NCBI RefSeq assembly: GCF_006345805.1
Contig: NC_043003.1
Coordinates: forward strand, 39,556,001-39,620,000
Length of the DNA: 64,000 nucleotides
DNA from: Octopus sinensis
Lineage: Eukaryota
Direction: 5' to 3'
Below, one piece after another: positions 1,468 to 59,039 of this stretch. Both the position numbers and the translations under genes were made by a program. Every line of letters starts with the position of its first letter. Positions within the stretch are counted from its first letter, which is position 1. The notes beneath the pieces are model-generated. The model was not told the origin of the DNA, ran no database searches, and saw only the letters and a program-made list of their open reading frames with translations.

Positions 1468-1516
1468 AGCCATTCCTGTGCCTATCATGATATAATTTAC
1501 GAACATCTAATGACTT

Positions 1517-1768
1517 CATCATCATCATCATCATCATCGTTTAATGTCCGCTTTCCGCGCTAGCATGGGTTGGACGGTTCGACCGGGGTCTGGGGAGCCA
1601 GGGGCTGCTCCAGGCTCCAGTCTGATCTGGCAGTGTTTCTACAGCTGGATGCCCTTCCTAACACCAACCACTCCACGAGTGTAGTGGGTGCTTTTTACGT
1701 GCCACCTGCACAGGTGCCAGAGGGGTCTGGCACCGGCCACGATCGATTGGTGCTTTTTATATCATTAA
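1517..1768 (-). mobile_element. RTE-type LINE 3' tail fragment ((GAT)n tail plus 3'UTR)
   Basis: Matches the 3' ends of the LINEs at 34561 and 38493. Confidence 0.8.
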
Positions 1769-32300: not shown

Positions 32301-34445
32301 TTCACGAGGAGGTCATTAAGTTCTGCGGTAATTTTCGGAGCTGTACTTTTGTGATCCTTTCTAACAACTCACGTAAGAGTCCGACAGTCCCTATCTGAAA
32401 GTTTTAGTTTTCTACCGGAGTTTTGTTTTGATGAGGAGGTTTTTACCACTTTCTCAAAGGCTGTCATTACTTTCGAGACAGTACTTCTTGATACACCAAA
32501 CATTTCAGCTGTTTTCGTTACACTAGTGCCTGCCATATGAGCACCAACAATTTTACCTCTTTGAAAGTCTGATAGATCTGTCATTTTAATGAATTTTAAT
32601 TACCTTTTTCCGATGATATCTGTAAAGAAACAGCCATTTTAGCATAACATATTAAGCAACTCTAATAATAAATGAAAAAATATATAAAAATAAACAAGCT
32701 TTTGACGGTATAATAGTTATTTCAAAATTATGATGTTATGATGCTAAGTGTTTCCATTATTTTGTATAACCCCTGTATATATATATATATATATATATAC
32801 ATACATACATACATACATACATAGATACACACACACACACGCACACACACACCTTTCATGCTACTAACATGCACTAAAAACTTCTTATGATACCATGAAA
32901 TTGTAATATTTTCACTAATTTCTTACTCATAATTAGTGAAAGCTAAACTGGTGGACTATGTAAACTGGTTGACTTCTTTTTATATCTATTATTATAACTC
33001 ACTACATAGGAGTAAAATCTCTCCAACAAAACTTTTCACTACACACACACACATAAATATATATTAGTTCATATATAGGTACAGGCATGGCTGTGTGTTA
33101 AGAAGCTTGCTTCCCAACCACATGGTTCTGGGTTCACTCCCACTGCATGGCACCTTGGGCAAGTGTCTTCTACTAAAGCCTCAGGCCAACCAAAGCCTTA
33201 TAAGCGGATGTGGATTAGGTAGACGGAAACTGAAACAAGCCCATATATGTGTGTGTGTGTGTGTGTGTGTAACAGTGTAACATATGGTATAATTAAAAAC
33301 AGGGCAAATATATATGGGTGTGTCTGTGTGTGCGTGTGCATGTATGTATATATTTGCGTGTCTGTGTTCATCTCCCCACCATCACTTGACAACTGATGTT
33401 AGTGTGCTTATGTCCCAGTCATTTAGTGGTTCGGCAAAAGGGACTGATAGAATAAGTACTAGGTTTACAAAGAATAAGTCATGGGGTTGATTTGTTTGAC
33501 TAAAGTTGGTGCTCCAGCATGGCCTCAGTCAAATGACTGAAACATGTGGAAAAAAAATATATATTGGTGAGGATTAGTGTATGCTAGGCTATCTTGTGCT
33601 AGGTCCATTACATCATGACAAGGTCATTACTGTGGTTCTTGTGACTGCAAACACTATGAGATTCAGCATTATACCATTAGGTTGCTATTTACGCAAACTC
33701 ATCCATATATATAAATCAGTTTATTCCAGTAATTACATGCAGACCACCTTACCTGTTGACTTGTCAAGGTTTTTCCACCCTCAGCATCTTTGTCGGAGTC
33801 CCTGATTTCATCCATCAAGCACGTATACATGCTCAGGAAGGAGTAAATAAGTTGCATGTCGGATACTCTGAGGAAGAGTCGGCATTTATGTTGTACAAAG
33901 TAGAGGGTGGGTGGCATGAGCCACTCAAACATGTCATTTATCAGTTCCTTGTGAGCAAGTTCTAGATGGTCTGGGAGTTCATAGTCCATGTAGGATTGCT
34001 TGAAGGGCCTCCATCCCATTTCTTCAGGTTCCATGTAGATCATTCCACATCTGCTCACTGTGGCTGGTGAGGCTTGCTCAAGGTCAGCAGCTTCAAACAG
34101 TAAGTTCATTGCTTTACTCATCTGGATTATTTCACCACTCATTAAACATAGCTATAAAATAGATAATTAAACAGGATAATTAAGATAAAGAAACACAATT
34201 TGTTTAGCTTTTGTTAGTGTGTTATATAAGATGAGAAATTAAAATTTATGAATATAGGCTCAGATGTGGGTGTGTGGTAAGAAGCTTGCTTCCCAACCAC
34301 ATAGTTCCAGATTCAGTCCAACTGTGTGGTACTTTCGGCAAGAGTCTTCTACTATAGCCTCGGACCAACCAAAGCCTTGTGAGTGGATTTGATAAACAGA
34401 AACTGAAAGAAGCCTGTTGTATGTGTATGTGTGTGCATATATATG

Positions 34446-34488
<43 letters not shown>

Positions 34489-37400
34489 TATATATATACA
34501 TAGACATATGTATATACATATATATATACATATGTATATACACATATATAATAATACATACATCATCATCATCATCATCATCATCATCGTTTAACGTCCG
34601 TTTTCCGCGCTAGCACGGGTTGGACGGTTCGACCGGGGTCTGGGAAGCCAGGGGCTGCTCCAGGCTCCAGTCTGATCTGGCAGAGTTTCTACGGCTGGAT
34701 GCCCTCCTAACGCCAACCACTCCGTGAGTGGAGTGGGTGCTTTTTACGTGCCACCTGCACAGGGGCCGGGGGGTCCGGCATCGGTCACGATCGGTTCGAG
34801 CTTTTAAAGTGCCAGTGGCACGGGGGCAACGGGATCCGGGGTACTTTGGGGATCCGGGGTACTTTGAATGGTTAGGGGGTATGTGGAATTGCTGCAGAAA
34901 GCAGCCCGGGTCTTTGCAGTCACAGCATATCTCCAGAGATCTCGGTCCTTCGCCATTGCCTCAGTGAGGCCCAATGCTCTGAGGTCATGCTTGACTACTT
35001 CATCCCATGTCTTCCTGGGTCTACTCTCCCCCTGATACCTTCAACTGTTGGGAGTGGCACTTCTTCACACATCTCTCTTCATCCATCCGCAGCACATGAC
35101 CATACCATCGCAAGCGTCGCTCTTGCACACCACATCTGATGCTTCTTATATCCAGCATTTCTCTCAGGATGCTTACACCTGTCTTGCGTGCACACTGACA
35201 ACAAACATCCAGCGGATCATGCTAGCTTCATTTCTTTCAAGTCTACGCATGTCCTCTGCAGTCACAGCCCATGTTTCATTACCGTGAAGCATGGCAGTTC
35301 ACACACATGCATCATACAGTCTACCTTTCGCTCTGAGGGAGAGACCTTTTGTTGCCAGTAGGGGTAGGAGCTTTCTGAACTTTGCCCAGGCTATTCGTAT
35401 TCTAGTGGTGATACTCTCTGTGCATCCACCTCCGCTACTAACTTGGTCACCCAGGTAGCGGAAACTATCAACTACTTCTAGTTTCTCTCCCTGGAGTGTG
35501 ATGGAATCTGTTTTCTGAGTGTCTGTTGTGTCTATTGTCCCTGTGCATCTGCTGCACATGAAAGCTATCTTATCTGTTAATTTCCCTTTAATGTTGCTGC
35601 ACCTCTTATGTGTCCATAGCTTACATTGGGTGCATCTTATGGAGTTTCTACCTGTACCTTTCTTACAGATTGAGCAGGGCCACCTACCCGAAGGGGTGTG
35701 TGCTGAGTACCTCTTGCTGCTTACTAATACTTTGGTCTTTGCTACATTTATTCTAAGGCCCTTTGATTCTAACCCTTGCTTCCACACCCGAAATTTCTTT
35801 TCTAGTTCCGGTAGTGATTCTGCTATGAGAGCTAGGTCATCGGCATAGAGGAGCTCCCAGGGGCATCCCGTTTTGAATTCCTCTGTTATTGCCTGAAGGA
35901 CTATGATGAATAAAAGGGGACTGGGCTGAGCCCTGGTGCACACCTACTTCTACCCGGAATTTCTTCACTATATCATGCCAGTCCTAACCTTGCTGACAGC
36001 CTCTCTGTATAGAGCCTGTACAGCCCTTATTAGCCATTCGTCAATCTCCAGTTTCCGCATCGACCACCAGATAAGGGAACGGGGAACCCTGTCAAAGGCT
36101 TTCTCCAAGTCTACAAAAGCTATAGTAGGGGTTTATCTTTAGCTAGGTACTTCTCCTGCAGTTGTCGGACCAGGAATATAGCATCAGTGGTGCTTCTACC
36201 TGGTACAAAACCGAACTGCATTTCATCTAAACAAATTCTCTCCCTAATGAGATGGGTTATGACCTTCTCTGAGACCTTCATCACCGGTCCAACAGTTTGA
36301 TACCTCTGTAGTTATTTCTATCTAGAGCATCACCCTTACCCTTGTAAGTTGACTATGTGCTGCTGCACCAGTCATTGGGTATGACTCCATTGTGAACTAC
36401 CTGGTTTACAATGCGGGTGACTATGCCATAGCCCACATAGCCAGCTGTTTTAAGCATCTCAGCAGTGATTCCTGATAGGCCGGGGGCTTTACCTGGTTTC
36501 ATATCCTTAATTGCCTTATCTACAAGGGAGCTGTCTATTCGGGTAGCTGGTCCCTCTACTGGGTCAACATTTGGCAGGCTCTCCTCCTCCCATTCATTCT
36601 CCTCATTCAGCAGTCTTTCATAATGGCTTCTCCAAGCCTCTTTCTTTTCACTAGCAGTAAAAGCAAGTGCCCCATCATCCATTCAGACACATTTCTCTCC
36701 TATAACATCACTATTTTCTCTGACACACTGTCTGGCAATCCGAAATACTTCAGCTCTTTGATCCTCGCGTCGCTGGACATTGGCAAACTTCTTCTTTTCT
36801 GCTACATCTTTGGCTATGTATACCTGCCACCCAGCCTCCCTTTTGGCTATCTGGTACAGTTCCCTGCTGCCCCCATCCTTCCAGGCTTTCCAGGCCCGTC
36901 TCTTTTCACAAATGGCTTTATCTACTGCACTATTCTACCACCACGTAATTCTAGGTCTGGAAGGGACTTTGCACCATCCACAGACTCGGTCTGTGGCACT
37001 CAGCAAGCTGTCCCATAGGAATTCCCAGCTACCTTCTATGTCTGACGTCTGAAGCTCCTCCTCCCTCTCATCAAATTTCTTGATGAGTATGTCCCTAAAT
37101 TTCTGACCATGTGAAGGGTTCTTTAGCCTCCAAATCCTTCTTTTCTGGATTGGTTTGTTTCTTGGAGTCCTTCTGGCCTCAAGCTTAAAGTCACTGATGA
37201 TTAGTCTATGCTGAGGGATACATTCTTCACTCGGGAGGGTCTTTGTATTCAAGAGCAACCCTGCATCCCGCTGTCTGGTGAGGATGAAGTCTATTTGGCT
37301 AGCGGAATCTCCTGACTGATAAGTTATAAGGTGGCAAACTGGCTTCTTGAAGTTAGTGTTGCAGATTGAAAGGTTACATGCATCACAGAATTCCAGCAGT

Positions 37401-38410
37401 CTAGTTCCCTCATCATTTCTGGTGCCAATACCATGGCCACCATGTACCCCAGTGAAGATACCCGATTCCCGCCCAACATGCCCATTAAAATCTCCACCTA
37501 CAAAGATGAGGTCCTTGCTACTAGTCTTTGAAGTAGCCTGCAGAAGGGTATCATAAAAGTTGTCCTTCTGATCATTTGGTAGTCCCACTTGTGGGGCATA
37601 GGCGGAGATAATCATAGCTGTGCCACTCTGTAGGACCAACCTGAGCTTAAGCACTCTATCGCAAACCCTGACAACCTCTATGACCTTATCCACCCATTTC
37701 TCCGCAAGGAGAATGCCTACCCCCTACACCTTCCACGTTACCTTGCCAGAAGAGTTTGTACCTAAGTGCCTTGCCCGTGAGGACCCTAGCTGAAGCACCT
37801 CTCCATCTTACCTCTTGTATGTAGCATACATCAACCTGTCTTCTCTCTAGCATCTCTACAATCTCACTAGACTTGCCTGTCAATGTACCAACATTGATAG
37901 TGCCAACTCTAAAACTGGGAAGGAGATGTGGGGCGGAGGGGGGGATTCAGCGCCTGAGAAGAGGGGGTTGTTGTGGTGGTGATAGTTTTCGTGGCATTTT
38001 TTTTGATCTCTCTTCCGACCTGACCACGCCGTGGGCAGGAGCTGGTGTTAGCAGTGGTCATTCGTTATCGTCACTGAGTAACGTAATTAGGTAGCGTAGT
38101 AAGGGGAAAAATACAGATATTCTAGAGTTGAGTTGGGGGGGGGGTCCAGCTGAGAAAGGTTCACCAGTGAAACGAGAGAGGAGAGATAGTGGAGGGGTGC
38201 GGGTAATATAGGGGAGCACCAGTGGGGAAGGTTGGGGTAAGGAGGAACGATGGCAGGAAGGGTTGGTGCAGGTTCGTAAGAAATAAAAACGTAGGATATT
38301 ACTAGGCGGGGGGTGGGGGACTGGAAGGAGATAGTCGGATGAGGCAGGCAGTGTCAGATTCAAAAACAGGAGGAAGCGTAAGATCAGTGGGCGGTTGATG
38401 AGCTGTGGCG

Positions 38411-38447
<37 letters not shown>

Positions 38448-41400
38448 CATACATATATATATACATACATATAAATATATACATACACATATATATCATC
38501 ATCATCATCGTTTAGCGTCCGCTTTCCATGCTAGCATGGGTTGGATGGTTCAACTGGGGTCTAGGAAACCAGGAAGCTGCAAAAATCCAGTCTGATCTGG
38601 CAATGTTTCTACGGCTGGATGCCCTTCCTAACGGCAACCACTCCGTGAGTGTAGTGGGTGCTTTTTACGTGCCAGATGAGGCTGGCAAACGGCCATGATC
38701 GGATGGTGCTTTTTACGTGCCACCAGCACGGGGGCCAGGCGAGGCTGGCAATGGCCACGTTCAGATGGTGCTTTTTCGGTGCCACCAGCACGGGGGCCAG
38801 GCGAGGCTGGCAACGGCCACGATCGGATGGTGCTTTTCACGTGCCACCGGCACGAGGCCAGGCGGGGAGGCACTGGCAACGGCCACATTCGGATGGTTCT
38901 CTTAAGTACCACCGGCACTGGTATCACAGCTGCAATTTCCATTGATGTTGATTGATTTCGATTTTCACTTGCCTCAACAGGTCTTCACAAGTAGAGTTTT
39001 GTGTCCCAAGAAGGAAAGGTATGCATAAGTGGACTGGCTACATCCCATGTAGAGGCCACGGGTTACGGTTTCACTTGTCCTGCCGGGTCTTCTCACGCAC
39101 AGCATACTTCCAAAGGTCTCGGTCTCTAGTCATTTCCTCAGTGAGACCTAAAGTTCGAAGGTCGTGCTTCACCACCTCATCCCAGGTTTTCCTGGGTCTG
39201 CCTCTTCCACAGGTTCCCTCAACTGCTAGGGTGTGGCACTTTTTCACACAACTATCTTCATCCATTCTCGCCACATGACCATACCAGTGCAAATGTCTCT
39301 CTTGCACACCACAACTGATGCTTCTTAGGTCCAGCTTTTCTCTCAAGGTACTTACACTGTCAAGTATGAACACTGACATTACACATCCATCGGAGCATAC
39401 TGGCTTCATTTCTTGCGAGCTTACGCATATCCTCAGCAGTCACGGCCCATGTTTCACTGCCATGTAGCATGGCTGTTCGTACACACGCGTCATACAGTCT
39501 GCCTTTTACTCTGAGCGAGAGGCCTTTTGTCACCAGCAGAGGTAAGAGCTCTCTGAACTTTGCCCAAGCTATTCTTACTCTAGCAGTTACACTTTCAGCA
39601 CACCCGCCCCCGCTACTGACTTGGTCACCTAGGTAATGGAAGCTATCAACTATTTCTAGTTTTTCTCCCTGGAATGTGGCAGAAGTTGGTCTCAGAGCAT
39701 TTTCAGTGTTTATTGCTCCTGAGCATCTGCCACATACAAAAACTATCTTCCTAGTTAGCCTTCCTTTGACATTGCTGCACTTCTTATGTGTCCATAGCTT
39801 ACACTTGGTGCATCTTATAGAGTTTCTACCTACACTTTTTCTACAGATCGAGCAGAGCCATCTACCTGAAGGCATTTGTCATTTGTCTACCTTCCTACTT
39901 ATTAGGACTTTGGTTTTAGCTAGATTGACTCTAAGGCCCTTTGATTCTAATCCTTGCTTCCACATCTGAAACTTCTCCTCCAGTTCTGATAGTGACTCAG
40001 CAATTAGAGCAAGGTCATCAACATAGAGGAGCTCCCAGGGCATCCTGTCTTGAATTCCTCCATTATTGCCTGGAGGACTATGATAAATAGGAGGGGGCTG
40101 AGGACTGAGCCTTGGTGGACCCCTACCCGGAATTTCTTTACTGTACTAGTTGCCAACCCTCACCTTACTAGTGGCGTCCCTGTAAATGGCTCGCACAGCT
40201 CTCACTAACCATTCATCTATCCCTAGTTTCCTCATTGACCACCAGATAAGGGATCGAGGGACCCTGTCGAAGGCTTTCTCCATGTCAACAAAAGCCAGGT
40301 ACAGGGGCTTATCTTTGGCTAGGTATTTCTCCTGCAGCTGCCTTACCAGGAATATAGCATCAGTGGTACTTTTCCCTGGCAAGAACCCAAACTGCATCTC
40401 ATCTAAACTAACTCTCTCTCTAATTAGTTGGGTTATGACCCTCTTCGTAACTTCATTACCTGATCCAACAGCTTGATACCTCTGCAATTATTTGTATCTA
40501 GGGCGTCACCTTTACCTTTGTAGCAGTTGACTATTATGCTGCTACACCAGTCATTGGGTATGCCTCCTTCATGTATCACCTGATTAACCATACGTGTGAA
40601 TAGGCTATAGCCGACACTACCGGATATTTTGAGCATCTCTGCAGTGATTCCTGATGGGATGGGGCTTTCCCTGTCTTCATGCTTCTAATTGCCTTAACTA
40701 CCGAGGAACTGTCAACTCAGATAGCTGATCCCTCTGTTGGGTCGACATTAGGCAGACTCTCTTTATCTCACTCATTTTCTTTATTCAGCAACCTTTCATA
40801 GTGGTGTCTCCAAACCTCTCTCTTTGCATCCTCATTTAGCGCAAGTGAACCATCATCCATGCGAACACATTTCTTTCCTACCACATCACGATTCTCTCTC
40901 ACACACTGTCTTGCAACACGAAACACCTCAAGTCTTTGGTCCTCTCAAGTTTTTGGTCCTCAAAGTCTTTGGTCCTATATATATATATATATATATATAT
41001 ACTAGACTAGAATAGCCGTGACCCATTGGGTTAGGGTCAGAGTTTCCTAGCAACGGAGTTATGTTTTATGTTTTTTTTTTCCACCTTATTTCACATGCTT
41101 TCAATGAATGTGACATCGAAATCACACATAAACGGCTCCTTACCCCAGAAAAGAAAAGATTTGGCTGCTATTTCTTGCATACCCAGCTACCAAGTAACAG
41201 GTATTTCAAGTCCTTAACCACAAATACCTGTTATGTGGTAGCAGAGCGTGCTAGAAATAGCAGCCAACTCTATGGAGCTGAGATACGTTGAATGTACCCG
41301 AAAAATGTTTTGTAATGATATCCCCTTGGGGGCAATCTTTTGCTTTGATTCTCAGAACTGTCATCTGGATCAGGTGGTTTTGTTCGTTAATTTCCATAAA

Positions 41401-43442
41401 AAAAATTTATGTATTTTCTTTCAATTTAAAGTGAGAGAGAGGTAAAAGTGAAAGAGGTATGAATGTATATATGAAATGGACATGTGTGTGTGAGAGAGAG
41501 AGAGAGTACTACTTACACTTACATGAGAACACACATGTTCACTCACTCTCTCTCTCTCTCTCTCTTCTCTCCCTATCTTTCTCTCACACATACATACAAA
41601 AAAGATGAACACATATGTATTGATGTAAGTATACATGACAATACACCCCTTCACTCACTTTCTTTCTTCCTCTCCCTCTTTTCTTTCTCTCTCTTCCTCT
41701 CTCTCTCTTTCATTCACACACACACGTCCATTTAATATACATGTACATACATCTTTCTTTCACTTTAAAACAAAAATCAATAAATGAAAAATTTTTACAG
41801 AAATTTACGACTTGAAAATAATTTTAAAAAACAATAAACTATTGTGTGGTTAAAGAAAGCTAAATTATAAATACTTACTGTACAAACAACTTACATTTTT
41901 GAAATCACAATCAGTTAAAAATATTTCTAAATGATTAAAATACTGTGTACATCAAAAAGTTGACATTATTTTTTTTTCTGAGAGAGTGCAAAGACTATGT
42001 GTGTGTATACGTCACAGATAACAGATGTGTGTTTGTGTTGATTGACATGCCATGACATTCATAATATGTGTGTGTATTCTTATTCTGTATGTGTGTTGTT
42101 GTCACAGAAGCTGTATTTTTTTCCATCGAGTAATAACAAAAATTGTGTTTAATCATTTTCCTTAATAAATAGAGGTTAAATTTGTACTGCAAGTATGAAA
42201 ATAAATATGCAATAAAATTAAGATAAAATATATTATTTCTGAGATGTTTCAGGTACTCACAAACATCCCTAGATTTTTAGTATTATGAAGATATATATGT
42301 ATATATCTTAGAGCACTCCATTGGTTACAACGATAAGATCAACAGAATAGCTTGCTTGTGAAAATAACGTGCAAGTGGCTGAGCGCTTTACAGACACATG
42401 TACTCTTAACATAGTTCTCAGGGAGATTCAGTGTGACACAGAGAGTGACAGGGCTGGCCTTTTTGAAATACAGGTACCACTCATTTTTGCCAGCTGAGTG
42501 GACTGGAGCAACATGCAATAAAGTGTCTTGCTCAAGGATACAATGCATCACCAGGAATTGAACTCACAACCTTATGATTGCGAGCCAAATGTTCTAACCA
42601 CTAAGTCGTGTGTGTGTGTGTGTCTTTGTGTCTGTGTTTGTCTTCTCATTACCACTTGACAACTAGTGTTTGTGTCTACCTCCCCGTAACTTAGTGGTTC
42701 AGCAAAATAGACCAATAGATTAAGTACAAGGCTTAAAAAATAAGTTCTGGGGTCGATTTCTTCAACTAAAACTCTTTAAGGTAATGCTCCAGCACAACTG
42801 AAGTTAAATGACAGAAACAAGTAAAAAAAAATAAAAGAGTAACAGAGAGTGTGTGTGTGTCTTGAAACTAACCTTTTTGTTGTCGTCAAGGACTGTATTC
42901 ATGTTCTCAATCCAGATGGCATCCACAGGACCATCAAAAATAATCCACTTGCGGTCATCGGTCGCTTCATTAGCAAATGACCTGAATACTGTTGCCAAAA
43001 CCCCTGGGAGAGAGGACAAACAAAAAGAGAAATATGGTAATCACTGGGATTAGAAATAAGCTGTCAGTCACTTGTTTACACTATTGGGTCAAGGAATATT
43101 TAGAGAATTTATGGAATATACGGAAAAAATGGACAGGAAAATAATTATGACGATGATGACGGTGACGATAACAGTGGCAACGATGACAGCAACAACAACA
43201 TCGATGATGGAGAATATATAGAATATAGTCAAAGACAACTAGTTTATCAAGCCAGGCTGAAGCATAAACTAGATCACACAGGCTATATAAGGACAATTAT
43301 TACAAAACAACCTAATTTATAATGTAAACCAAAGTCAATGTATAAAGGGTCAATATACATTGTAGCAACTTAAGATTTTTGAAAATTATGAGGTGTTAGC
43401 AAAGTTTGTGTACAGAGATGTGTTGGAAGAACTTATTTACAT

Positions 43443-43484
<42 letters not shown>

Positions 43485-45737
43485 CCTTCAAGCATAAACA
43501 GAGATAGAAATTGTCCAAATGAATGTATACAGTTCTTGAGAAGATCAGTGCTTGATATAAATCTTGCACTGTTTCAGAGAGAAAATCTTACAATTTTGTC
43601 CTTATCACAAGAACCCATCCAGACAAACACATCAAAAAAAAAAAAATTTGCTAGCTCAGCATGTAGAGGCAAAATGAAGGGGAAATGGGTCATAAGCTTC
43701 TTTTTCATTGGTTGGAGTATCAAAAGTTTTCCTGAGGTGCATTGATTTGATTAATCAGAACCCATGTTAATCACAACTCTAGCCCAGCTCCAACAATAAA
43801 TGCATGTTAGAACTGTATATTTTACAAAATATTTTAAAATTAAAAAGTGAATATTTTAAAATTAAAAAGAACCAGAGTCAAGCTAAACATTGCTACAGGC
43901 AAGACCCAACCTCCAGCCCATATATTTAAACCCAATTTATAAGGGGTAACTGTGCTTTGCAGAATTCCTTTCTAATTTAAAATATTTATACTTCTATAGA
44001 CATGAATTGAGTGCCTCTATCATTGTGAACAGTACTCAGCATTCCAACAAAACAGCGTGGCTCTTTAAGACATTAAACAAAAGTTTCAGATGTTATATCA
44101 ACTAAAGAATAACCAAAGTATTCATCAACTGCCACAATACTAATTTCAAAATGCTGATCGTTTTAGGCGTAGGAGGGGCTGTGTGGTAAGTAGCTTGCTT
44201 ACCAACCACATGGTTCCAGGTTCAGTCCCACTGCGTGGCACCTTGGGCAAGTGTCTTCTACTATAGCCTTGGGCCGACCAAAGCCTTGTGGGTGGATTTG
44301 GTGGACAGAAATTGAAAGAAGCCTATCGTATATATATATATATATGTTTGTGTGTCTGTGTTTGTCCCCACCCTCCAACATCGTTTGACAACCGATGCTG
44401 GTGTGTTTACATCTTCGTAACTTAGCGGTTCGGCAAAAGAGACTGATAGAATAAGTACTAGGCTTACAAAGACTAAGTCCTGGGGTCAATTTGCTCAACT
44501 AAAGGCGGTGCTCCAGCATGGCCACAGCCAAATGACTGAAATAAGTAAGAGAGTAATAGAGTTTAGATTACACAAAATCCAATGAGATACGTTCCATAAT
44601 CTGAGAAGCTTTTATGAGGTAGTATTCAATCAGGTATGCTGGTATTTTGAAAATACCTCATGGACTGGCAATCATGCCTTGTATAGTTACAGACTGCCCT
44701 TGGAAAGTTATAGCACCTGTTCAGCCACCTGCCAGAGATACAGCAAATTCATGGAACTGCAGCATGGCAGATTGTAAAGAGGCAACAGAAGAGCTCAACT
44801 GAGCTAACAATACGTCTTACATTGATGATGAAGAGAGGAATCCTAGAAGATCAACAGTTAGGATCACCAAGCTTTATCAAGAGAGGAACTGCAATGCATC
44901 CATAGGGATGGCATCCATGGTTGTGTAGTCAGATAATGAAAGATTCACTAAGACTCAAACTCTCAATTCAAATTTATAATAATGGAATTGGATGGCAACA
45001 GAAAGTTATGGGAATCTGCAAAAGCTGAGCAGCAGGAGAGAGAGAGAGAGAGCTTCAATCAGACTATAAAATTTAAGTTTTTGTGGCAGTTGATGAATAC
45101 TTTGGTTATTCTTTGGTTGATATAACATCTGAAACTTTTGTTTAATGTTTTAAAGAGCCACGCTCTTTAGTTGGAATGCTGAGTACTGTTCACAATGATA
45201 GAGGCACTCAATTCATGTCTATAGAAGTATAAACATTTTTAAATTAGAAAGGAATTCGGCAAAGCACAGTTACCCCTTATAAATTGGGTTTAAATATATG
45301 GGCTGGAGGTTGGGTCTTGCCTGTAGCAATGTTTAGTTTGACTCTGGTTCTTTTTAATTTTAAAATATTCACTTTTTAATTTTAAAATATTTTGTAAAAT
45401 ATACAGTTCTAGCATGCATTTATTGTTGGAGCTGGGCTAGAGTTGTGATTAACATGGGTTCTGATTAATCAAATCAATGCACCTCAGGTAAACTTTTGAT
45501 ACTCCAGCCAATGAAAAAGAAGCTTATGACACATTTCCCCTTCATTTTGTCTCTACATGCTGAGCTAGCAATTTTTTTTTGTTTTTTGATGTGTTTGTCT
45601 GGATGGGTTCTTGTGATAAGGACAAAATTGTAAGATTTTCTCTCTGAAACAGTGCAAGCTTTATATCAAGCACTGATCTTCTCAAGAACTGTTTACATTC
45701 ATTTGGACAATTTCTATCTCTGTTATGCTTGAAGGTC

Positions 45738-45784
<47 letters not shown>

Positions 45785-48048
45785 TATATATATGCCATGT
45801 AAATAAGTTCTTCCAACACATCTCTGTACACAAACTTTGCTAACATCTCATAATTTTCTAAAATCTTAAGTTGCTACAATGTATATTGACTCTTTATACA
45901 TTGACTTTGGTTTACATTATAAATTGTTTTTCTTTGTAATAATTGTCCTTATAGGAAAACAAGATTTTCTTGGATCTGGGTATGACAAGAATCTAATCCC
46001 ACTTGGATGACAGAATTCATTGTGAATATGTCAAAGAAATCTAGCTGAACATTCCAACACAAGACATCAGTGTGCAAATTCTCTTTTCGACAGTCGTAGA
46101 AAATGTCAAAGCTATATGAATCAAGCTGAACCCTACAATGTAATATCTTGTCATCTTTATTTTGTATTTTTAAGATTTATCAAATATATTTCAGTTAATC
46201 TCGAATGAGAGTAAAGTGTCAGTTAATGTTGCTATTGACATTAGTACTTAGCAGTTGTGACAAATTTATTCTCAATAAAAGGATACAATTTACTTTTGGA
46301 AAGGGTGCAAGAGGGGAAAAACTTACTGGACGCCCACCTTGTGATAACGTAGCTAGACCAACGACTTAATGAGTCAGTAACAAACTCGTCTATCACAATG
46401 CATTACAGAACACAATGCTTTAGCATTGTGTTCTGTAAGTGAGAGAACTCATAACTTGAGGAAAAAATAGAATCACAATCAAGACCATGTTTAACCCTTT
46501 AGCATTCAAATTACTCTATCAAATCTAATACTTGTTTATTCACAGTGTTTTGAATTAATCATGCATTATCTCATAACTTCAAGATTTCAATGATGTGGCT
46601 GAAAATTTTTGGAATGATATTGTAGAGTAGGTGTGAGAAGCCAGATCTAGCTGATTTGAACAAAGAACAGGTGGAATATTTGGGCTGGATATAACCAGTT
46701 TAAATACTAAAGGTTTAATTTCCTTTCAATCTCAATTATCACAGATCTTCTACCATAAATACTACATATTTTATTAGCATACATTGTCTTCTCTCACCAC
46801 AGGTCTTCTATTTTCATGGTAACTCCCTCCAATCACTACAGTTCTCTAAACTTACTATTCATTGAGACACCCTTCGGTCATGACTGACCATGGGATTGCA
46901 CCTAGAAAGTTACCCTCCCAGGCACAAGTCCGGGCAAGGTTGTTTATGAAAGACCAGCAGTTGCCCATGCATACTGGCCTCCCCTCTCCATGCCACCAGT
47001 GTTATCCAAGGGAAAGGCAAAGACCGATACAGCTGGGTACCTGTGATGTCACAACTCATTTCTACAGCTGAGTGAACCGGAGCAAAGTGAAATAAAGTGT
47101 CTTGCTGAAGAACACAACACGCAGCCCGGTCCAGGATTCGAACTCACAACCTCACGATTGTAAGCTCGACGCTCTAACGACTGAGCCATGCGCTTTCACA
47201 AAACTTACTATTACATAATTCATTTCCATAATACTCTCCAGCCACAAGTCTTTTACATACACTGTCACATGTTTTAATACCAGAGTGTAATACACACGAT
47301 ATGGCTAATATTTTATACAGTCATTGAAGAAAAAAGGCACTAAATGCAAGAAAGGTATTTGCAAGTGTTCATTCACAAAAAGAATTGACCTTACCGTCTG
47401 TCCACTCATGGGACACAGGATCAAAGCAACCATATAATTGTCCCATTGTGATAGACTTGGGGTTAATTATGGTATATTTCACTTTGTTTTCTTCAAACAG
47501 TTTACCCTGGCAGAGATCTGTCAAAGCATCTGCAAGAACTTGGTAAGCCATGGTTTTCCCGCCCAAAGGTTCTCCAACAATCATCAAGCCATGGCGTACA
47601 AGAATCATTTCATATACCTGCAACACAGAAGATGTAAATTTATATATACACACATTGTCATCATCATCATCGTTTAACGTCTGTCTTCTATGCTGGCATG
47701 AGATACACAAACACACACATATAACCTGCACTTGGTCGGTTATGAAGACAAGGGTTCCAGTTGATCCAATCAATGGAACAGCCTGCTCATGAAATTAATA
47801 TGCAAGTGGCTGAGTACTACACAAACACATGTATCCTTAATGTAGTTCTCAGGGAGATTCAGCATGACACAGAGTGTGACAAGGCTGGCCCTTTTGAAAT
47901 ACAGGTACTACTCATTTTTTGACAGCTGAGTGGACTGAAGCAACGTGAAATAAAGTGTCTTGCTCAAGGACACAACACATTGCTGGGAATTGAACTCACG
48001 ACCTTATGATCAGGAATCAAATACTCTAACCACTAAGCCACATGCCTT

Positions 48049-51194: not shown

Positions 51195-51726
51195 GACGAC
51201 GATGATTTCATAGAAAAGACAGAGATCAATGTAAAGCTTGAATGAAAAAGAAAATAATTTTACCTGTGATAAGAATTTTGGAAGGTTAACATCATTGATG
51301 GCTTTCAATAGAAGTACTGATTCGTCTAGAGCACCGTGTTTTAACTTGAGATTACCTGCTGCTGTTAATACAGACTTTACAGCTCTCATACCATAATCAT
51401 AATGATGCTGAGAGGATAACTGCTCTGAACAAAGTTTGTAAGTAGCCACAATCTTCCCGGATAAACTGGAAATGACATAGTGGAGTAGATGTTGTGATTA
51501 CTTAATTACTGGTATAGTTGTTGCTGTCAAAATAATAAACTTTCACCAACACCATTATCTCAACTACCACCACCCCTATCATAAACGCAATCACCAGAGC
51601 TGCAGCCACCACAACTATAACAACCATAAAATAAGTTCCAGTCACCTCTAACATAGCTACATGCCAACAGAACTATCTAGTAACAATTACCAATACAAGT
51701 AGCACAGACATATATAAATGTGTGTG

Positions 51727-51780
<54 letters not shown>

Positions 51781-52061
51781 CACCACACACACACACACAC
51801 AAACATATATATATATATATATATATGTACAAAAAGGAGGCGAGCTGGCAGAATCGTTAGCACACCGGGCGAAATGCTTTGCGGTATTTCGTCTGCCGCT
51901 ACGTTCTGAGTTCAAATTCCGCCGAGGTCGACTTTGCCTTTCATCCTTTCGGGGTCGATTAAATAAGTACCAGTTACGCACTGGGGTCGATGTAATCGAC
52001 TTAATCCCTTTGTCTGTCCTTGTTTGTCCCCTCTGTGTTTAGCCCCTTGTGGGCAATAAAG

Positions 52062-52098
<37 letters not shown>

Positions 52099-52771
52099 AG
52101 GGAGTGATGGAAAGTTCCTGGTTTTAAGGGTATCATAAAAGGCCTGACCACTGCAATAAGTATAAAAATCTGAGAGGGGAATATGTTGAATAAAATCATA
52201 ATTAATTGATCCTTCTGTATTCTCTTTTACCCAAAGCCATATATATATATACATAATAGATGAATTAAAATAATGGTCATTATATATTATTCCTTTATTA
52301 TAGTAAATTTGGCTTACACCTGTTTCCAGTAGTCATTATAAATAGGTTTACCCAATTAGTATATTGATAAAAAGAGGCAAATTGAAAGACCTAAGAAAAC
52401 TAATGATTTTTCTTGCAATGGCTCTGACAAAAATATTAATTTTCTTAGGTCTTTCGATTTACCTCAGTTGATCAATAGACCATTAAAGAATTGTGATGAA
52501 CCATAAATTAGTTCTTTACTAATCTGACAAATATTGTTAGCTTGGTGTGCTAACAGAGAACTTATGAAGTATTTTGCCTGGATTAATAACTTTATTTTCG
52601 TATTACATGTTGTTTACATTTTATGATGTCCCGTACCTATATATGCATACCTATACACATATGTATGTATGTATGTACATATATGGATGTATATATATGT
52701 GTATGTATATATATTATTTATATTATTATTTGATTGAATGCCATGCACCCATTTCCAAGTAAGTTTATCTT

Positions 52772-52820
<49 letters not shown>

Positions 52821-53064
52821 TATATATATGTACAAAAAGGAGGCGAGCTGGCAGAATCGTTAGCACACCGGGCGAAATGCTTTGCGGTATTTCGTCTGCC
52901 GCTACGTTCTGAGTTCAAATTCCGCCGAGGTCGACTTTGCCTTTCATCCTTTCGGGGTCGATTAAATAAGTACCAGTTACGCACTGGGGTCGATGTAATC
53001 GACTTAATCCCTTTGTCTGTCCTTGTTTGTCCCCTCTGTGTTTAGCCCCTTGTGGGCAATAAAG

Positions 53065-53099
<35 letters not shown>

Positions 53100-53770
53100 A
53101 GGGAGTGATGGAAAGTTCCTGGTTTTAAGGGTATCATAAAAGGCCTGACCACTGCAATAAGTATAAAAATCTGAGAGGGGAATATGTTGAATAAAATCAT
53201 AATTAATTGATCCTTCTGTATTCTTTTACCCAAAGCCATATATATATATACATAATAGATGAATTAAAATAATGGTCATTATATATTATTCCTTTATTAT
53301 AGTAAATTTGGCTTACACCTGTTTCCAGTAGTCATTATAAATAGGTTTACCAAATTAGTATATTGATAAAAAGAGGCAAATTGAAAGACCTAAGAAAACT
53401 AATGATTTTTCTTGCAATGGCTCTGACAAAAATATTAATTTTCTTAGGTCTTTCGATTTACCTCAGTTGATCAATAGACCATTAAAGAATTGTGATGAAC
53501 CATAAATTAGTTCTTTACTAATCTGACAAATATTGTTAGCTTGGTGTGCTAACAGAGAACTTATGAAGTATTTTGCCTGGATTAATAACTTTATTTTCGT
53601 ATTACATGTTGTTTACATTTTATGATGTCCCGTACCTATATATGCATACCTATACACATATGTATGTATGTATGTACATATATGGATGTATATATATGTG
53701 TATGTATATATATTATTTATATTATTATTTGATTGAATGCCATGCACCCATTTCCAAGTAAGTTTATCTT

Positions 53771-53814
<44 letters not shown>

Positions 53815-54594
53815 ATATGTGCACATAAAGGTGTAACAAGTTGGAAAAAAACAATACTCGAATACAGGAAACAAAACCATTTTCAAACGTGTATCTATCA
53901 AAGTAATTGTACATAACCTTATTTTGTTCCACTCAAAACAAAACTCTGACGAACAGGAATGAGAAATTTTGAATAACAGTTTTTCGATGGAGTGTATATG
54001 TATATATATATATATATCATTTAGGCATAGCGATACTAATAATCTGATGTTAGAATTCAGTATCCATAGGCTTCAGAATGAAGTGTCAGTTGAGTATAGA
54101 GAGATAATAAGAAATTAGGATGACAAAGGAATAATCAATTATGTTATGAATTTTATTAGCTTACAGCTGTTCCTGCTATAGAATGCAATGCATACACATA
54201 CATATCCAATACACATACTACACACACACACAAACACACACACACACACACACAAAACATGTAAGTAAAGTTCTTCCTTACTTTCTGGCCTGTACAAATC
54301 CCATGGAGTATAGCACAATTTCACCAATGAGTGCATAGTCTGGTACCATCATTGCAACTGTACGGAACAGTACCTGAAATAGCCAAGATTATTTGAGAAG
54401 ATTTAAGTTTTTCTTTACGATAGACACTCCCCCACAATTTTCTATCCATTTAATGGGAACTAGGCTCTTTCAACAAAATCAAACATAACATGTATCAAGG
54501 AAATGGTTTTGCAGCATTACATACTCTCTACTTACATATGAACACAAGTCCCTAAAGTCATCACAAACATAAGGGACACATTCTTCAAAACCAG

Positions 54595-54646
<52 letters not shown>

Positions 54647-57600
54647 ATGTGTGTGTACATATGTATGTATATATAGATAGATAGATAGACAGACGGATAG
54701 ATATACATATATACATATATATATATATAAGTGGGCTGTAACCAGTCCACTTATGAGTACCCTTCATTCATTGGACAATAAACTTTGCTTGCAAAGACCT
54801 GTTGAGGCAAGTGAAATCAAAATCGCTGACGTGGCCAATGACAGTACCACCTGATTGGCATTCATGCCAGTGGAACGTTAAAAGAACCATCCAAGCATGA
54901 TCGTTGCCAGGGCCACTAACTGGTTCTCATGTTGGTGCCACGTAAAAAGCACCATTCGAGCATGATCATTGCCAGCGTCACCTTACTGGTACATGTAAAA
55001 GAACATTTGAGTGTGGTCATTGCCAGTGCTGCTGGACTGGCCCTTGTGCCAGTGGCATATAAAAGCATCCACTACACTCTCAGAGTGAAGGGCATCCAGC
55101 TGTAGAAATTTTGCCAGATCAGATTAGAGCCTGGTGCAGCCTTCTGGCTCGCCGGTTCTCAGTCAAACCATCCAACCCAAGCCAGCATGGAAGGCAGATA
55201 TTAAACGATGATGATGATGATGATGATATATATAATATGAAGGGTTTAGTTCACTTGTGATCTAAACGAAAAGGTATGCTGGGTAAGTGCTATAGTAGGT
55301 CCACCTTTATGTTCCAAGATCACCTCTAAGGCTGGTGTAGGGACCCATGCTAGGGATCTGTTATAGCAGGTATATATTATATTATAGGAAAAATCAAAAC
55401 CAAGGCAGAACAAGTATCTCAAGTCATTTATAATAATTTAATTTGAAGTCTTACAGCCGTTTCTGGGATAACCCAAATGGTAGGTTAGCATGTCCATGCA
55501 CTGAGCATTCTGTCATCTGAGACAAGGTATGAATATTTTAGACATGAAAGAATTTACAGTTTATAAGGAATAAAATTCACAGTTTGTAAGGAATAAAATA
55601 AAAGAGTAAAAGTTGTTAGAAGAATATAGGCAGGAGAATAGTGTGCACAACTCATCTTTTTCCAGAGGATATGGATGTTTGGTCAGTACTTCCATGAAGG
55701 TACAGGTCCTTAGTTAAAATCCCAGGTAAATCCAGGCAGTACTTTGAATGATGAATTCATATTGTAAATGTGTATATAGGAAGTATGATGGACATAGAAT
55801 TTTAACTAAGGACCTATACCTTCATGAAAGTACCGACCAATATATATACATACATATATATATGTATGTCTGCTACTCCAGACTGATGACGAGCAAAGAC
55901 TCAGAAACTAATCTCTGGATGCAGGCTTAGCTGGGGGGAGGTGCTTGTCTCCCCCTTGTAAACATAAGGACACAGGAAATGTGTCAAGGCCAACAGTAAG
56001 TGTTGATGTTTCCTAGGGTTAAATAGCAGTGGTGTGATTCCCTTCATGCGACTGTCACAGTAAGTTGACAGCATACAACTATTCTATCATACCACTACTG
56101 CTTATATCTCTCTGAGATATTTAGAAATGTAATATATATATATATAAAGTGGAGAAAATTGAAAACGCAAATCATAGGCAGTCAAAGAGATTCCCAAACA
56201 TATAAATGAAAATATTCAATCAAAGTAGTTGAATCATATATATTTATACCCATCAACATAAATCATGCATGTACAGGCGTAAAGATTCTCCAAGGGTATA
56301 AAGAATAAAACCAATAGAAATATAGAAGAAATATAAAAAATACATAAAAATACATATAAAATTACATATAAATAAAATTTACAAGTGAGGAGTTATGCAT
56401 GATAGATATAGGAGGTGCAAAACGAACAAGAAGTTGATAAATATAGGAATAAGAACGTCAACCTTTAAAATGGCAAACTGCCAAAAATCATCTAAAAATC
56501 ACAAATACATATAGAATATAAGACAGAAATGACGCTAGATATCAAGGTTAAGAAAGACATAAATAAAATTGGATCCAAAAATAGGAAAGTATTTTTATTC
56601 GTTTTACACCTCCTATATTTATCACGCATAACTCCTCACATGTAAATTTTATTTATATGTAATTTTTATATGTATTTTTATATTTCTTCTATATTTTTTA
56701 CGTATGTTTGGTTTTATTCTTTATACCTTTGGAGAATCTTTATGCCTGTACATGCATGATTTATGCTGATATATATAAATATATATGATTCAATTACATT
56801 TATTAAATATTTTCGTTTATGCATTCGGGAATCTGTTTGACTGCTTATGATTTGCATTTTCAGTTTTCTCTAATCTGTATTTTTTCACATTGGCAAATAT
56901 ATATATATCCTTATTTAATATCCACTTTTTCATGTTCACATAGATCAGATGGAATTTGATGGGGTAGATTTTCTACAGCCAGATGCCCTTCTTGTCATCA
57001 ACCCTCACCAGTTTCCAAAGCAGGGTAATTATTTTCCCATGCCCAAATATAGTTTCACGGAAGATTGGAAATGAAGGACACAGCTTATATGAGAGTGACA
57101 CTCATTTACAACTACCAAGGAGAGACTAACACACACACACACACGATGTGCCTCTTTCAGTTTCTGTCAGACAAATCTACTCTCAAGGCTTTGATTGACC
57201 TGGGGCTATAGTAGAAGGCACTTGGTCAAGAAGCCACATGGTGAGATTGAATCTGAAACCATGTGGTTGGGAAGCAAACTTCTTAACTACAAAGCCATGA
57301 CAGCACCTAGGCACACCTACATCTAGCCACCCCCTATGCCTGTGGCTTAAATTATATAATTCATAAATAGTCACATCACGTGATCACCTGACTGACCAGG
57401 GTATCAGAAGTTACTACACATAGCTGGTCACAATACGTTCACATTGTTTTAGCCTTCGAATGACATCACCCTGCTGGCTAAGCGAGCAGGCCAACAAAAG
57501 AAAGAGTGAGAGGAGGAGTGGTGAAAGAGTACAACAGGGATCACCACCCGCTGCCTGAGCCTCGTGGAGCTTTTTAGGTGTTTTCGCTCAATAAACACAC

Positions 57601-59039
57601 ACAACGCCCGGTCTGGGAATCGAAACCACGATCCTACGACCGCGAGTCCACTGCCCTAACCACTGGGCCATTGCGCCTCCACAAATAGTCACATAATGGA
57701 TACTAATATCTGTAAACAAGACTGCTGATAGTTTCCCCATGTAATTACTAAAAACACTGTAACATAATTAAAGTCAACTACATAACTCATCCACTAACAC
57801 ACAAAACAGCAATTACATACCTTTGAGGGAGAGCCTGTTCACATACAAACACAATAGACTTTATACTAAATGGTGAATTATGCTAACCTTGAGGTTATCT
57901 GGCAGTTCTTGACGACCAGCATAGCCAGGATTCATGGTGATAAATATAGTGCAGGTTCGATCCAGCTTCAGTTCAGTTCCTTCAAAGATGAATTTACTTT
58001 GTTGTTGTGCTATAGCCATTTGAATACTCTGGATTTGTTGTGCAACCACAGACAGTACCTCTAATTCAATACGGTTGAACTCATCAAAGCAGGCCCAGGC
58101 TCCAGATTGGGCTAAACCTTTGAAAAATTTGCCCATTGCTTGGTAATCAAGACCATCAGAACAGTTGAATACTACACACTTTTAATGAAAAGAATATAAA
58201 TTGTTTAGAATAGTATAAGACCAAATTTCATTGACTATAAACCACAATAGAATTACCTTTCTTAAGATGCATGTTTTTCAAAGAAAAATGATCCCATGAA
58301 ACCTTCCTGGGTACTTTAATCATAATTACTTTAAATATTGGTTTCAAATTTTGGCACAAGGACAATAGTTTCAGGATGGGCATAAGTCAATTATATCAGC
58401 CCCAGTGTTCAACTGGTACTTATTTTATTAACCACAAAAGGATGAAAAACAAAGTCAACCTTGATGGTATTTCAGCTCAGAACGTAAAGATGGATGGAAT
58501 ACTGCTAAGAATTTTGCCCAGCATGCTAACAATTCTGCCAGCTTGTTGCCTTAGTTGCTTTAAATATTACATGCTTTGATGCACTAAAAACAATTTTTCC
58601 TGAATAGGTGTTACTGAAATTGGGATTCATCTAATATGCTTGTGCATCTTTTATATGCCATCTAATACTATATACACAGGGTTATATACAAACATGAGAA
58701 TAATTTTCAATAGTTATAAAACATATCCGGAATTATACACACACTGATATATACATACATAACTGTATTTTCAATATCTTTAAAATATAATTGGATTATA
58801 CACTCAAAAGTTATAAAGGTATGTGTGTGTGTGTATATATAAATATATATATGTGTGTGTGTGTGTGTGTATATATACACATACATACATATATACATAC
58901 ATATATACATACATATATATACACATAGACATACATAACATACACGTATGTAATATCACCGATTTTACGTAACTAAAATGACAGCATAATTACACAGGCA
59001 GATATGTACATATAAATATATTAACTATATACATGTATA

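What the first reader, a model, noticed from the sequence alone, without database searches (positions are those of the whole stretch)
43286..45953. ~850-bp near-perfect intronic inverted repeat starting ~280 bp from an acceptor
Seen: the arms are about 96-99% identical by eye and both include the same (TA)n at different lengths. There is no TSD, no transposase and no second copy in the window. The spacer holds a SINE A and a decayed fragment. Inference: a recent inverted duplication or long-TIR fold-back element. The pre-mRNA could form a very long duplex, a substrate for ADAR hyper-editing or Dicer, close to the exon 9 branch point. The divergence argues against an assembly artefact.
Basis: partly seen in the sequence, partly recalled or inferred. 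Interest (0 to 1): 0.72.

Follow-up and report, generated by a model that had tools for sequence, protein, structure and literature searches.

The report
Long inverted repeat in dynein intron
A real, fairly young, non-coding 2.7-kb "fold-back" (two ~860-bp mirror-image arms) sits inside an intron of a ciliary dynein motor gene and would make the unspliced RNA form a very long double-stranded hairpin, but nothing suggests it is more than an ordinary transposon remnant or local inverted duplication.

Summary
Arms 43286-44137 and 45081-45953 are inverted copies with 19 substitutions in 849 aligned bases (97.8% identity) and 7 indels, including different (TA)n lengths. The spacer is 943 bp: one SINE with its own target-site duplication, plus about 540 bp found nowhere else in the window. 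The element fills 2,668 of the 4,391 nt of intron 8 of a minus-strand axonemal inner-arm dynein heavy-chain gene and ends 282 nt upstream of the exon-9 acceptor. It is non-coding, with no Pfam domain in six frames, and has no other copy in the 64 kb. Folding the transcribed strand gives 828 arm-to-arm base pairs (MFE -1589 versus about -565 kcal/mol when shuffled).

Its origin is unresolved. The termini TATA...TATA can hide a TA/TATA target-site duplication, which would suit a Tc1/mariner-like long-TIR non-autonomous transposon. TSDs of 3-12 bp and foldback-type subrepeats are absent. An in-situ inverted duplication fits almost as well. No public collection reachable here held DNA of this organism or a close relative (the positive controls failed too), so copy number and empty-site tests could not be run. 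There is no evidence of function. Verdict: an ordinary intronic inverted repeat and a plausible ADAR substrate, of low to moderate interest.

The parts
43286..44137 (.). Left arm of the inverted repeat (852 nt, 31% GC). On the minus-strand transcript it is the 3' arm of the hairpin.
45081..45953 (.). Right arm of the inverted repeat (873 nt, 31% GC). On the transcript it is the 5' arm of the hairpin.
43446..43480 (.). (TA)17.5 microsatellite inside the left arm
45746..45793 (.). (TA)24.5 microsatellite at the homologous position in the right arm
44138..45080 (.). Spacer (943 nt), which forms the loop of the hairpin
44165..44567 (+). Copy of the window's abundant SINE with a tRNA-like head, inserted in the spacer. 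It has a plausible target-site duplication GTTTTAG/GTTTAG and is 7.7% (K2P) from the family consensus.
44568..45080 (.). Unique, non-coding part of the spacer (39% GC). It has no match in the window and no Pfam domain.
43284..43289 (.). Left junction ...GGCTA|TATAAGG. TA(TA) here could be one copy of a TA/TATA target-site duplication.
45950..45955 (.). Right junction ...CCTTATA|GGAAAAC. It holds the matching TA/TATA.
43004..47394 (-). Intron 8 (window numbering) of the dynein heavy-chain gene, 4,391 nt, which hosts the element
42873..43003 (-). Exon 9: ...[44 protein letters not shown], in the AAA2 region of an axonemal inner-arm dynein heavy chain (DNAH7/3/12-like)
47395..47617 (-). Exon 8: [22 protein letters not shown]...VSHEWTD(G), carrying the AAA2 P-loop

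Best explanation
This is a genuine, evolutionarily young, non-coding fold-back insertion riding passively in intron 8 of an axonemal inner-arm dynein heavy-chain gene. Its most likely origin is a non-autonomous cut-and-paste DNA transposon with unusually long terminal inverted repeats of about 860 bp. It would have integrated at a TA-rich site (...CTATA|TA|TAGG...), so its TA/TATA target-site duplication is indistinguishable from the palindromic ends of the arms. The internal region of about 540 bp also carries a SINE. The element encodes nothing. Its one predictable molecular effect is that the arms in the pre-mRNA (minus strand) pair into a near-perfect hairpin of about 830 bp with a 943-nt loop. 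Such a hairpin is a typical promiscuous ADAR substrate and is removed with the intron. Shown here: the repeat, its anatomy, its intronic position, its non-coding nature and the predicted duplex. Inferred: the transposon origin, the TA duplication, editing, and the absence of function. The layer 'real, passive, dsRNA-forming intronic passenger' is about 0.85 likely. The transposon origin specifically is about 0.45.
For: The arms are 97.8% identical with sharp outer and inner ends. The termini TATA...TATA lie in a TA-rich context, with a further TA on the left flank. This is compatible with the TA duplication and AT-repeat target preference of Tc1/mariner-type elements (established knowledge). 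The size of 2.27 kb without the SINE and the absence of any protein domain in six frames suit a non-autonomous element. The arms are more AT-rich (31% GC) than both flanks and the spacer (37-39%). Substitutions are spread evenly (6/6/7 per third, P = 0.61), as expected for one event followed by neutral decay. The fold gives 828 arm-arm pairs with helices up to 78 bp and an MFE of -1589 versus about -565 kcal/mol for shuffles, and the duplex persists in the whole-intron fold. Nearby inverted repeats are the conventional ADAR substrate across metazoans, octopus included (PMC9989829).
Against: No transposon hallmark is independently significant. The TA/TATA duplication is self-complementary, so it is equally well just the end of the repeat. 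The termini do not resemble canonical Tc1/mariner ends as I recall them. The recurrence of the terminal 10-mer inside the arms is not significant (P about 0.12-0.14). There is no transposase remnant and no second copy in 64 kb. Family copy number in the genome could not be tested. TIRs of about 860 bp are rare among characterised superfamilies.
Confidence: 0.45

Rival explanations
1. In-situ inverted duplication. One arm is ancestral intron sequence. An ~860-bp stretch was copied in reverse about 540 bp away (more if the SINE was already present), by replication template switching, snap-back priming or double-strand-break repair. No transposition was involved. The RNA-level consequences are the same.
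For: No unambiguous TSD exists. Arm and spacer sequences are unique within the window. There are no coding remnants and no subterminal repeat structure. Divergence is evenly spread and low, consistent with a single recent event. The spacer SINE (7.7% from consensus) may predate the arm divergence (about 1.1% per arm), which would suit a pre-existing intron segment.
Against: The repeat ends exactly in a TA-palindrome within a TA-rich context, which a random breakpoint would do roughly 10% of the time (inference from base composition). There is no significant microhomology or pre-existing short inverted repeat at the inner junctions (P = 0.23). The arms differ in GC from both neighbouring segments. 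The SINE age argument collapses when only transversions are counted (0.9% versus 0.6%).
Confidence: 0.35
2. Two independent insertions of the same ~860-bp dispersed repeat in opposite orientation, about 0.5-0.9 kb apart. This would mirror the inverted SINE pairs seen elsewhere in the gene.
For: Inverted pairs of dispersed repeats are common in this window.
Against: Both copies would need identical 5' and 3' boundaries. Neither arm has its own TSD, TIR or tail. The arms are much more alike (97.8%) than any other repeat pair in the window (at most 89%). There is no third copy in 64 kb.
Confidence: 0.07
3. Assembly artefact, for example a chimeric join of haplotypes or reads that created a spurious inverted copy.
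For: The same window contains a ~100%-identical 1-kb tandem duplication at 51811-53816, so local assembly quality is not beyond question.
Against: There are 19 substitutions and 7 indels between the arms. The spacer is 943 bp, unique, and has its own SINE. Both junctions are sharp. Palindromic read artefacts give identical arms with little or no spacer (general knowledge).
Confidence: 0.05
4. A functional cis-element. The duplex would be used by the host as an ADAR-recruiting editing inducer for neighbouring exons, as an endo-siRNA hairpin locus, or as a regulator of exon-9 splicing. This concerns function and is compatible with any of the origins above.
For: Long intronic duplexes can induce editing at sites about 150 nt away (PMC3479170). 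The duplex is very long and only 282 nt from exon 9.
Against: There is no unusual local structure in or around exon 9 to receive editing (z = +0.83). No exon lies inside the loop. The divergence pattern is neutral-looking, with no compensatory bias: only 2 G-U pairs, and the mismatches simply break the helix. There are no RNA data.
Confidence: 0.05

Closest known systems
Long-TIR non-autonomous Tc1/mariner-type (ITm) DNA transposons
   Same: Terminal inverted repeats; a possible TA duplication in an AT-repeat target; a short non-coding internal region.
   Different: The arms of about 860 bp are several times longer than typical long-TIR members (roughly 200-460 bp, from memory). The terminal bases are not canonical. 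There is no transposase remnant. No family copies could be shown.
Foldback elements (Drosophila FB, MuDR/Foldback group) and Galileo-like P-superfamily elements with 0.7-1.2-kb TIRs
   Same: Very long inverted arms, a small or absent coding centre, and hairpin-forming potential.
   Different: No 9-bp or 7-8-bp TSD. The arms are complex unique sequence, not arrays of tandem subrepeats.
Small inverted duplications from replication template switching or fold-back repair
   Same: The layout is arm, unique spacer, inverted copy. There is no unambiguous TSD, and the sequence appears to be single-locus.
   Different: No junction microhomology was detected. The ends coincide with a TA palindrome. The ancestral single-arm state has not been observed.
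Inverted Alu/SINE pairs in introns, the canonical ADAR hyper-editing substrates
   Same: An intramolecular intronic dsRNA formed by nearby inverted copies. It meets the criteria of at least 80% identity, at least 50 nt and within 2 kb used in PMC9989829.
   Different: The arms are not members of an abundant dispersed family within this window. The duplex is about twice as long and far more perfect than the window's own inverted SINE pair (about 400 bp, 88%).
Drosophila hpRNA (endo-siRNA hairpin) loci and intronic editing inducer elements (Gabra-3; PMC3479170)
   Same: A long transcribed hairpin near coding sequence.
   Different: There is no evidence of processing, of conservation, or of a target or receiving hairpin.

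Membership tests
Tc1/mariner-type (ITm) transposon, non-autonomous | TA target-site duplication flanking the TIRs | tested here: inconclusive
   TA and TATA readings are possible, but they are the self-complementary ends of the repeat itself.
Tc1/mariner-type (ITm) transposon, non-autonomous | Terminal inverted repeats | tested here: met
   852/873-nt arms at 97.8% identity.
Tc1/mariner-type (ITm) transposon, non-autonomous | DDE/D transposase or a remnant of one, or a related autonomous partner | tested here: not met
   No Pfam domain in six frames at E <= 1. A partner elsewhere in the genome could not be tested.
Tc1/mariner-type (ITm) transposon, non-autonomous | Multiple dispersed copies with the same termini | not testable with these tools
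   No copy in the 64-kb window. No genome of this clade is in the reachable collections, and the controls failed too.
Foldback (FB; MuDR/Foldback group) | 9-bp TSD | tested here: not met
   No direct repeat of 3-12 bp at the junctions, allowing for shifted termini.
Foldback (FB; MuDR/Foldback group) | Arms built of tandem subrepeats | tested here: not met
   Only (TA)n and one 22-bp doublet per arm.
hAT / P (Galileo) / Mutator | TSD of 8, 7-8 or 9-11 bp | tested here: not met
piggyBac / Kolobok | TTAA TSD. KolobokP additionally has long terminal direct repeats. | tested here: not met
   No TTAA at the junctions. The repeats here are inverted, not direct (PMC9587614).
Penelope-like element with inverted pseudo-LTRs | RT/GIY-YIG remnant and a hammerhead ribozyme motif in the repeats | tested here: not met
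   No Pfam hit. No hammerhead or other Rfam family at E <= 0.1, only sub-threshold mir-297 on (TA)n.
In-situ inverted duplication (template switch / fold-back repair) | An ancestral allele or orthologue with a single arm plus the spacer | not testable with these tools
   No related genome was reachable.
In-situ inverted duplication (template switch / fold-back repair) | Microhomology or a short pre-existing inverted repeat at the switch points | tested here: inconclusive
   The weak 17-nt similarity beyond the inner ends is not above chance (P = 0.23).
Intramolecular ADAR (hyper-editing) substrate | Reverse-complement match of at least 50 nt at 80% identity or more within about 2 kb on one transcript (criterion of PMC9989829) | tested here: met
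   About 850 nt at 97.8%, with 943 nt between the arms, both within one intron of a minus-strand gene.
Intramolecular ADAR (hyper-editing) substrate | Clustered A-to-G mismatches in RNA reads | not testable with these tools
   No RNA data are available.
hpRNA / endo-siRNA locus | 21-23-nt small RNAs mapping to both arms | not testable with these tools
   No small-RNA data are available.

The most novel reading that the evidence does not exclude
The near-perfect ~830-bp intronic duplex is not a passive passenger but is used by the host. In an animal with very active ADARs (if the source is a cephalopod, as the SINE suggests from memory), it could act as an editing inducer that recruits ADAR to the adjacent dynein exons. 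Alternatively it could be an endo-siRNA-producing hairpin that tunes expression of this ciliary motor gene.
Probability: 0.05. Interest if true: 0.6.

Novelty: new member of a known kind. Interest (0 to 1): 0.25.

Why it matters
If the repeat is real and transcribed, it is one of the longest and most perfect intramolecular dsRNA sources one would expect in a protein-coding pre-mRNA. That makes it a convenient natural probe for ADAR hyper-editing or Dicer activity in the tissues that express this axonemal dynein. If it is a transposon, it would document a family with exceptionally long TIRs. If it is an in-situ duplication, it is a clean small example of template-switch mutagenesis. Nothing here suggests a new kind of system, and inverted repeats in introns are routine in repeat-rich animal genomes.

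Tried and rejected
1. Copy number through the large protein collection. I searched a 1,416-aa composite of stop-free translations from the arm, the unique spacer and the flanks. It returned nothing, and the flank positive controls also failed, so the result is uninformative.

2. Host identification and orthologous introns through dynein exons. The single-exon query reached at most 84% identity and only short ORFs. The multi-exon query reached at most 67% identity, with only proteins up to about 1,000 aa scored and bivalve DNAH3 as the best named hit. My 1e-100 cut-off there would also have hidden single-exon hits. Two fetched loci came from unrelated genomes with compact introns. The exhaustive representative search and the cluster look-up gave no informative names.

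3. Exact look-ups of the exon-8 and exon-10 ORFs: none is on record.

4. Literal scans with a 22-mer from the arm found nothing in viral or metagenome contigs. The SINE control also found nothing, so those collections hold no DNA of this clade.

5. A literature search for stretches of the SINE consensus gave no hits. The attribution to a cephalopod therefore rests only on my memory of the octopus SINE, together with mollusc-leaning dynein hits.

6. Terminal-motif recurrence as possible transposase-binding sites. The 10-mer ATAAGGACAA occurs only inside the element, but under a proper null P is about 0.12-0.14. Rejected.

7. Extension of the repeat past the inner ends as a fold-back primer: P = 0.23. 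Rejected.

8. Dating the SINE against the arms. The result depends on whether transitions are counted, so the order of events is unresolved.

9. Rfam gave only sub-threshold mir-297 hits on (TA)n, and ARAGORN found no tRNA.

10. KolobokP was considered because it occurs in molluscs. It has direct terminal repeats, not inverted ones. Rejected.
Full report
OBSERVATION. The repeat finder reports collinear inverted segments that together span 43286-44137 and 45081-45953, and I read the sequence directly. A gapped alignment of the left arm against the reverse complement of the right arm is continuous from end to end. Restricted to the arms, it has 849 aligned positions, 19 substitutions (9 transitions, 10 transversions; 97.8% identity; K2P 0.023) and 7 indel events. 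Two of the indels are the different lengths of the shared (TA)n tract, 17.5 versus 24.5 units. The outer ends are sharp...CACAGGCTA|TATAAGGACAATT... on the left and ...AATTGTCCTTATA|GGAAAACAAG... on the right. The inner ends are sharp too (...CTGCCACAA| on both sides), and the weak similarity beyond them is not above chance (P = 0.23). All other inverted pairs in the window are 137-400 nt at 76-89% identity, and at least one is an inverted SINE pair. The focal repeat is therefore an outlier in both length and identity.

GENE CONTEXT. The ORF-like segment next to the element translates to [44 protein letters not shown]. This matches residues of about 1670-1712 of solved axonemal inner-arm dynein heavy chains (DNAH7, DNAH3, DNAH12; E down to 8e-19). 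Nine further dynein exons can be read on the minus strand, including the AAA1 P-loop GPAGTGKT and the AAA2 GEPLGGKT. All have canonical AG/GT boundaries. Exon 8 ends at 47395 and exon 9 begins at 43003. Intron 8 is thus 47394-43004 (4,391 nt), and the element occupies 2,668 nt of it. On the transcript the order is: exon 8, 1,441 nt of intron, the reverse complement of the right arm, the 943-nt loop, the reverse complement of the left arm, 282 nt of intron, exon 9. No exon lies inside the loop.

ANATOMY. The spacer (44138-45080) contains one copy of the window's abundant SINE at about 44165-44567. Its family has at least 12 copies in the window, and six were aligned. The copy has a plausible target-site duplication, GTTTTAG/GTTTAG, so it is a separate insertion. 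Without it the spacer is about 540 bp. The remaining 513 bp, and both arms, have no other copy in the 64 kb, even in a low-stringency BLAST with (TA)n masked. There is no ORF longer than 71 aa and no Pfam domain in any of six frames at E <= 1. Rfam gives only sub-threshold mir-297 hits on the (TA)n tract, and ARAGORN finds nothing. The arms contain no tandem subrepeat arrays, only (TA)n and one 22-bp doublet. The arms are 31% GC, compared with 37% in both flanks and 39% in the unique spacer.

TRANSPOSON HALLMARKS. I scanned for direct repeats of 2-12 bp at the junctions, allowing the true terminus to be shifted by -3 to +9 bp. Only TA and TATA were found, and these are the self-complementary ends of the repeat itself. 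TSDs of the hAT, P/Galileo, Mutator/Foldback, piggyBac/Kolobok and Harbinger types are excluded. A Tc1/mariner-type TA duplication in a TA-rich target (reconstructed target ...GGCTATATATAGGAAAA...) is compatible but cannot be demonstrated. The terminal 10-mer ATAAGGACAA recurs, inverted, about 310 bp inside each arm and nowhere else in the window. However, the chance that some k-mer from the terminal 30 nt recurs at 10 nt or more within the arm is 0.12 for shuffled interiors and 0.14 empirically. I do not count this as evidence.

AGE AND HISTORY. Substitutions are evenly spread (6/6/7 per third; largest gap P = 0.61 under uniformity). This fits one event followed by neutral decay and shows no patchy gene conversion. 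The spacer SINE is 7.7% (K2P) from a leave-one-out consensus, compared with about 1.1% per arm. That difference is almost entirely transitions (21 transitions, 3 transversions). On transversions alone the two ages are similar, 0.9% versus 0.6%. The order of SINE insertion and repeat formation therefore stays open.

RNA CONSEQUENCE. Folding the transcribed strand of the element with ViennaRNA gives an MFE of -1589 kcal/mol, compared with about -565 for shuffles. There are 828 arm-to-arm base pairs (572 A-U, 254 G-C, 2 G-U) in 24 helices, the longest 78 bp. The same 828 pairs appear when the whole 4,391-nt intron is folded. The structure far exceeds the criterion used in a 22-species survey for intramolecular editing substrates: at least 50 nt at 80% identity or more, within +/-2 kb. 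That survey identifies pairing of nearby inverted repeats as the conventional ADAR substrate, in Octopus bimaculoides among others (PMC9989829). Promiscuous editing of such a duplex is therefore a reasonable expectation from established ADAR biology, but no RNA data were available. A long intronic duplex can also induce editing at a hairpin about 150 nt away (PMC3479170). Here, though, exon 9 and its surroundings show no unusual local structure (z = +0.83). The branch point, normally within about 40 nt of the acceptor, lies roughly 240 nt from the duplex. By looping out 943 nt and zipping up about 1.7 kb, the hairpin would if anything shorten the effective intron.

EXTERNAL COMPARISON. The decisive tests are copy number in the genome and the state of the orthologous intron, and I could not run either. 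A composite ORF query from the arms, spacer and flanks found nothing, and its flank controls failed as well. Dynein queries returned only distant sequences: at most 84% identity on one exon and at most 67% on ten exons, with bivalve and gastropod proteins as the best named hits. Two fetched loci came from unrelated genomes with compact introns. Exact ORF look-ups failed. Literal scans of viral and metagenome contigs found neither the arm nor the SINE control. The SINE consensus looks to me like the abundant octopus SINE, but that is memory and was not tested; a full-text search for it found nothing.

INTERPRETATION. The element is real, young, non-coding and intronic. Two origins remain close. 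I slightly favour (about 0.45) a non-autonomous long-TIR DNA transposon inserted at a TA-rich site. The reasons are that the repeat ends exactly in a TA palindrome within a (TA)n-like context, that the arms differ in composition from both neighbouring segments, and that the size and lack of coding capacity suit such an element. An in-situ inverted duplication (about 0.35) explains the lack of any significant transposon hallmark and the apparent uniqueness equally well. Two independent insertions of one repeat family (about 0.07) and an assembly artefact (about 0.05) are unlikely. Against the former, both arms have identical boundaries. Against the latter, the arms differ by 26 events and the spacer is unique. 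A host function (about 0.05) has no support. Classic foldback membership fails on two tested defining features, the 9-bp TSD and the tandem-subrepeat arms.

VERDICT. This is a new member of a known kind, an intronic long inverted repeat that can form dsRNA. It may serve as a natural ADAR/Dicer probe but is not surprising to a specialist. Interest: 0.25.

Noticed in passing
window 51811-53816: A tandem duplication of about 1 kb (51811-52813 and 52814-53816) is essentially 100% identical apart from microsatellite length. It is either very recent or an assembly artefact. It lies in a dynein intron about 6 kb from the focal repeat.
   Followed up: partly
window ~34300-40000, minus strand (intron 9): GC-rich block (45-48% GC) holding remains of a non-LTR retrotransposon. 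Its ORF pieces hit Exo_endo_phos_2, RVT_1 and a PHD finger. There appear to be two partial copies, with frameshifts.
   Followed up: partly
window 18084-18474 and 19213-19611: An inverted pair of the abundant SINE (about 400 nt, 88% identity, 738-nt spacer). It is a second, more ordinary dsRNA-forming pair in the same gene. The SINE family has at least 12 copies in the window.
   Followed up: partly
window 42491-42610 and 47065-47190: Two copies in direct orientation (75-85% identity) of a second repeat whose minus strand carries a tRNA-like T-arm motif (GGTTCGAATCC-like). They bracket exon 9 plus the inverted repeat.
   Followed up: no
window 56116-56432 and 56592-56922: Another inverted repeat, with ~320-nt arms at 80% identity and a 159-nt spacer, rich in (TA)n. 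Its nature was not determined.
   Followed up: no
window 1516-1760 and 2746-2992: An inverted pair (83% identity) of a repeat that begins with (TCA)n followed by GTTTAAC. It is probably a third dispersed repeat family.
   Followed up: no
window 43140-43215: A degenerate trinucleotide tract of GAT/GAC type (ATGACGATGATGACGGTGACGAT...) lies in the 282 nt between exon 9 and the left arm.
   Followed up: no
window 28001-30000: Strong negative GC skew (-0.37) and AT skew (-0.12) in one 2-kb bin. I did not examine it.
   Followed up: no
window 51453-57887, minus strand: The dynein exon expected between exons 4 and 6 (...[13 protein letters not shown]...-type segment) was not located cleanly. Only a frame-ambiguous fragment was seen in the stop-free segments.
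   Followed up: no
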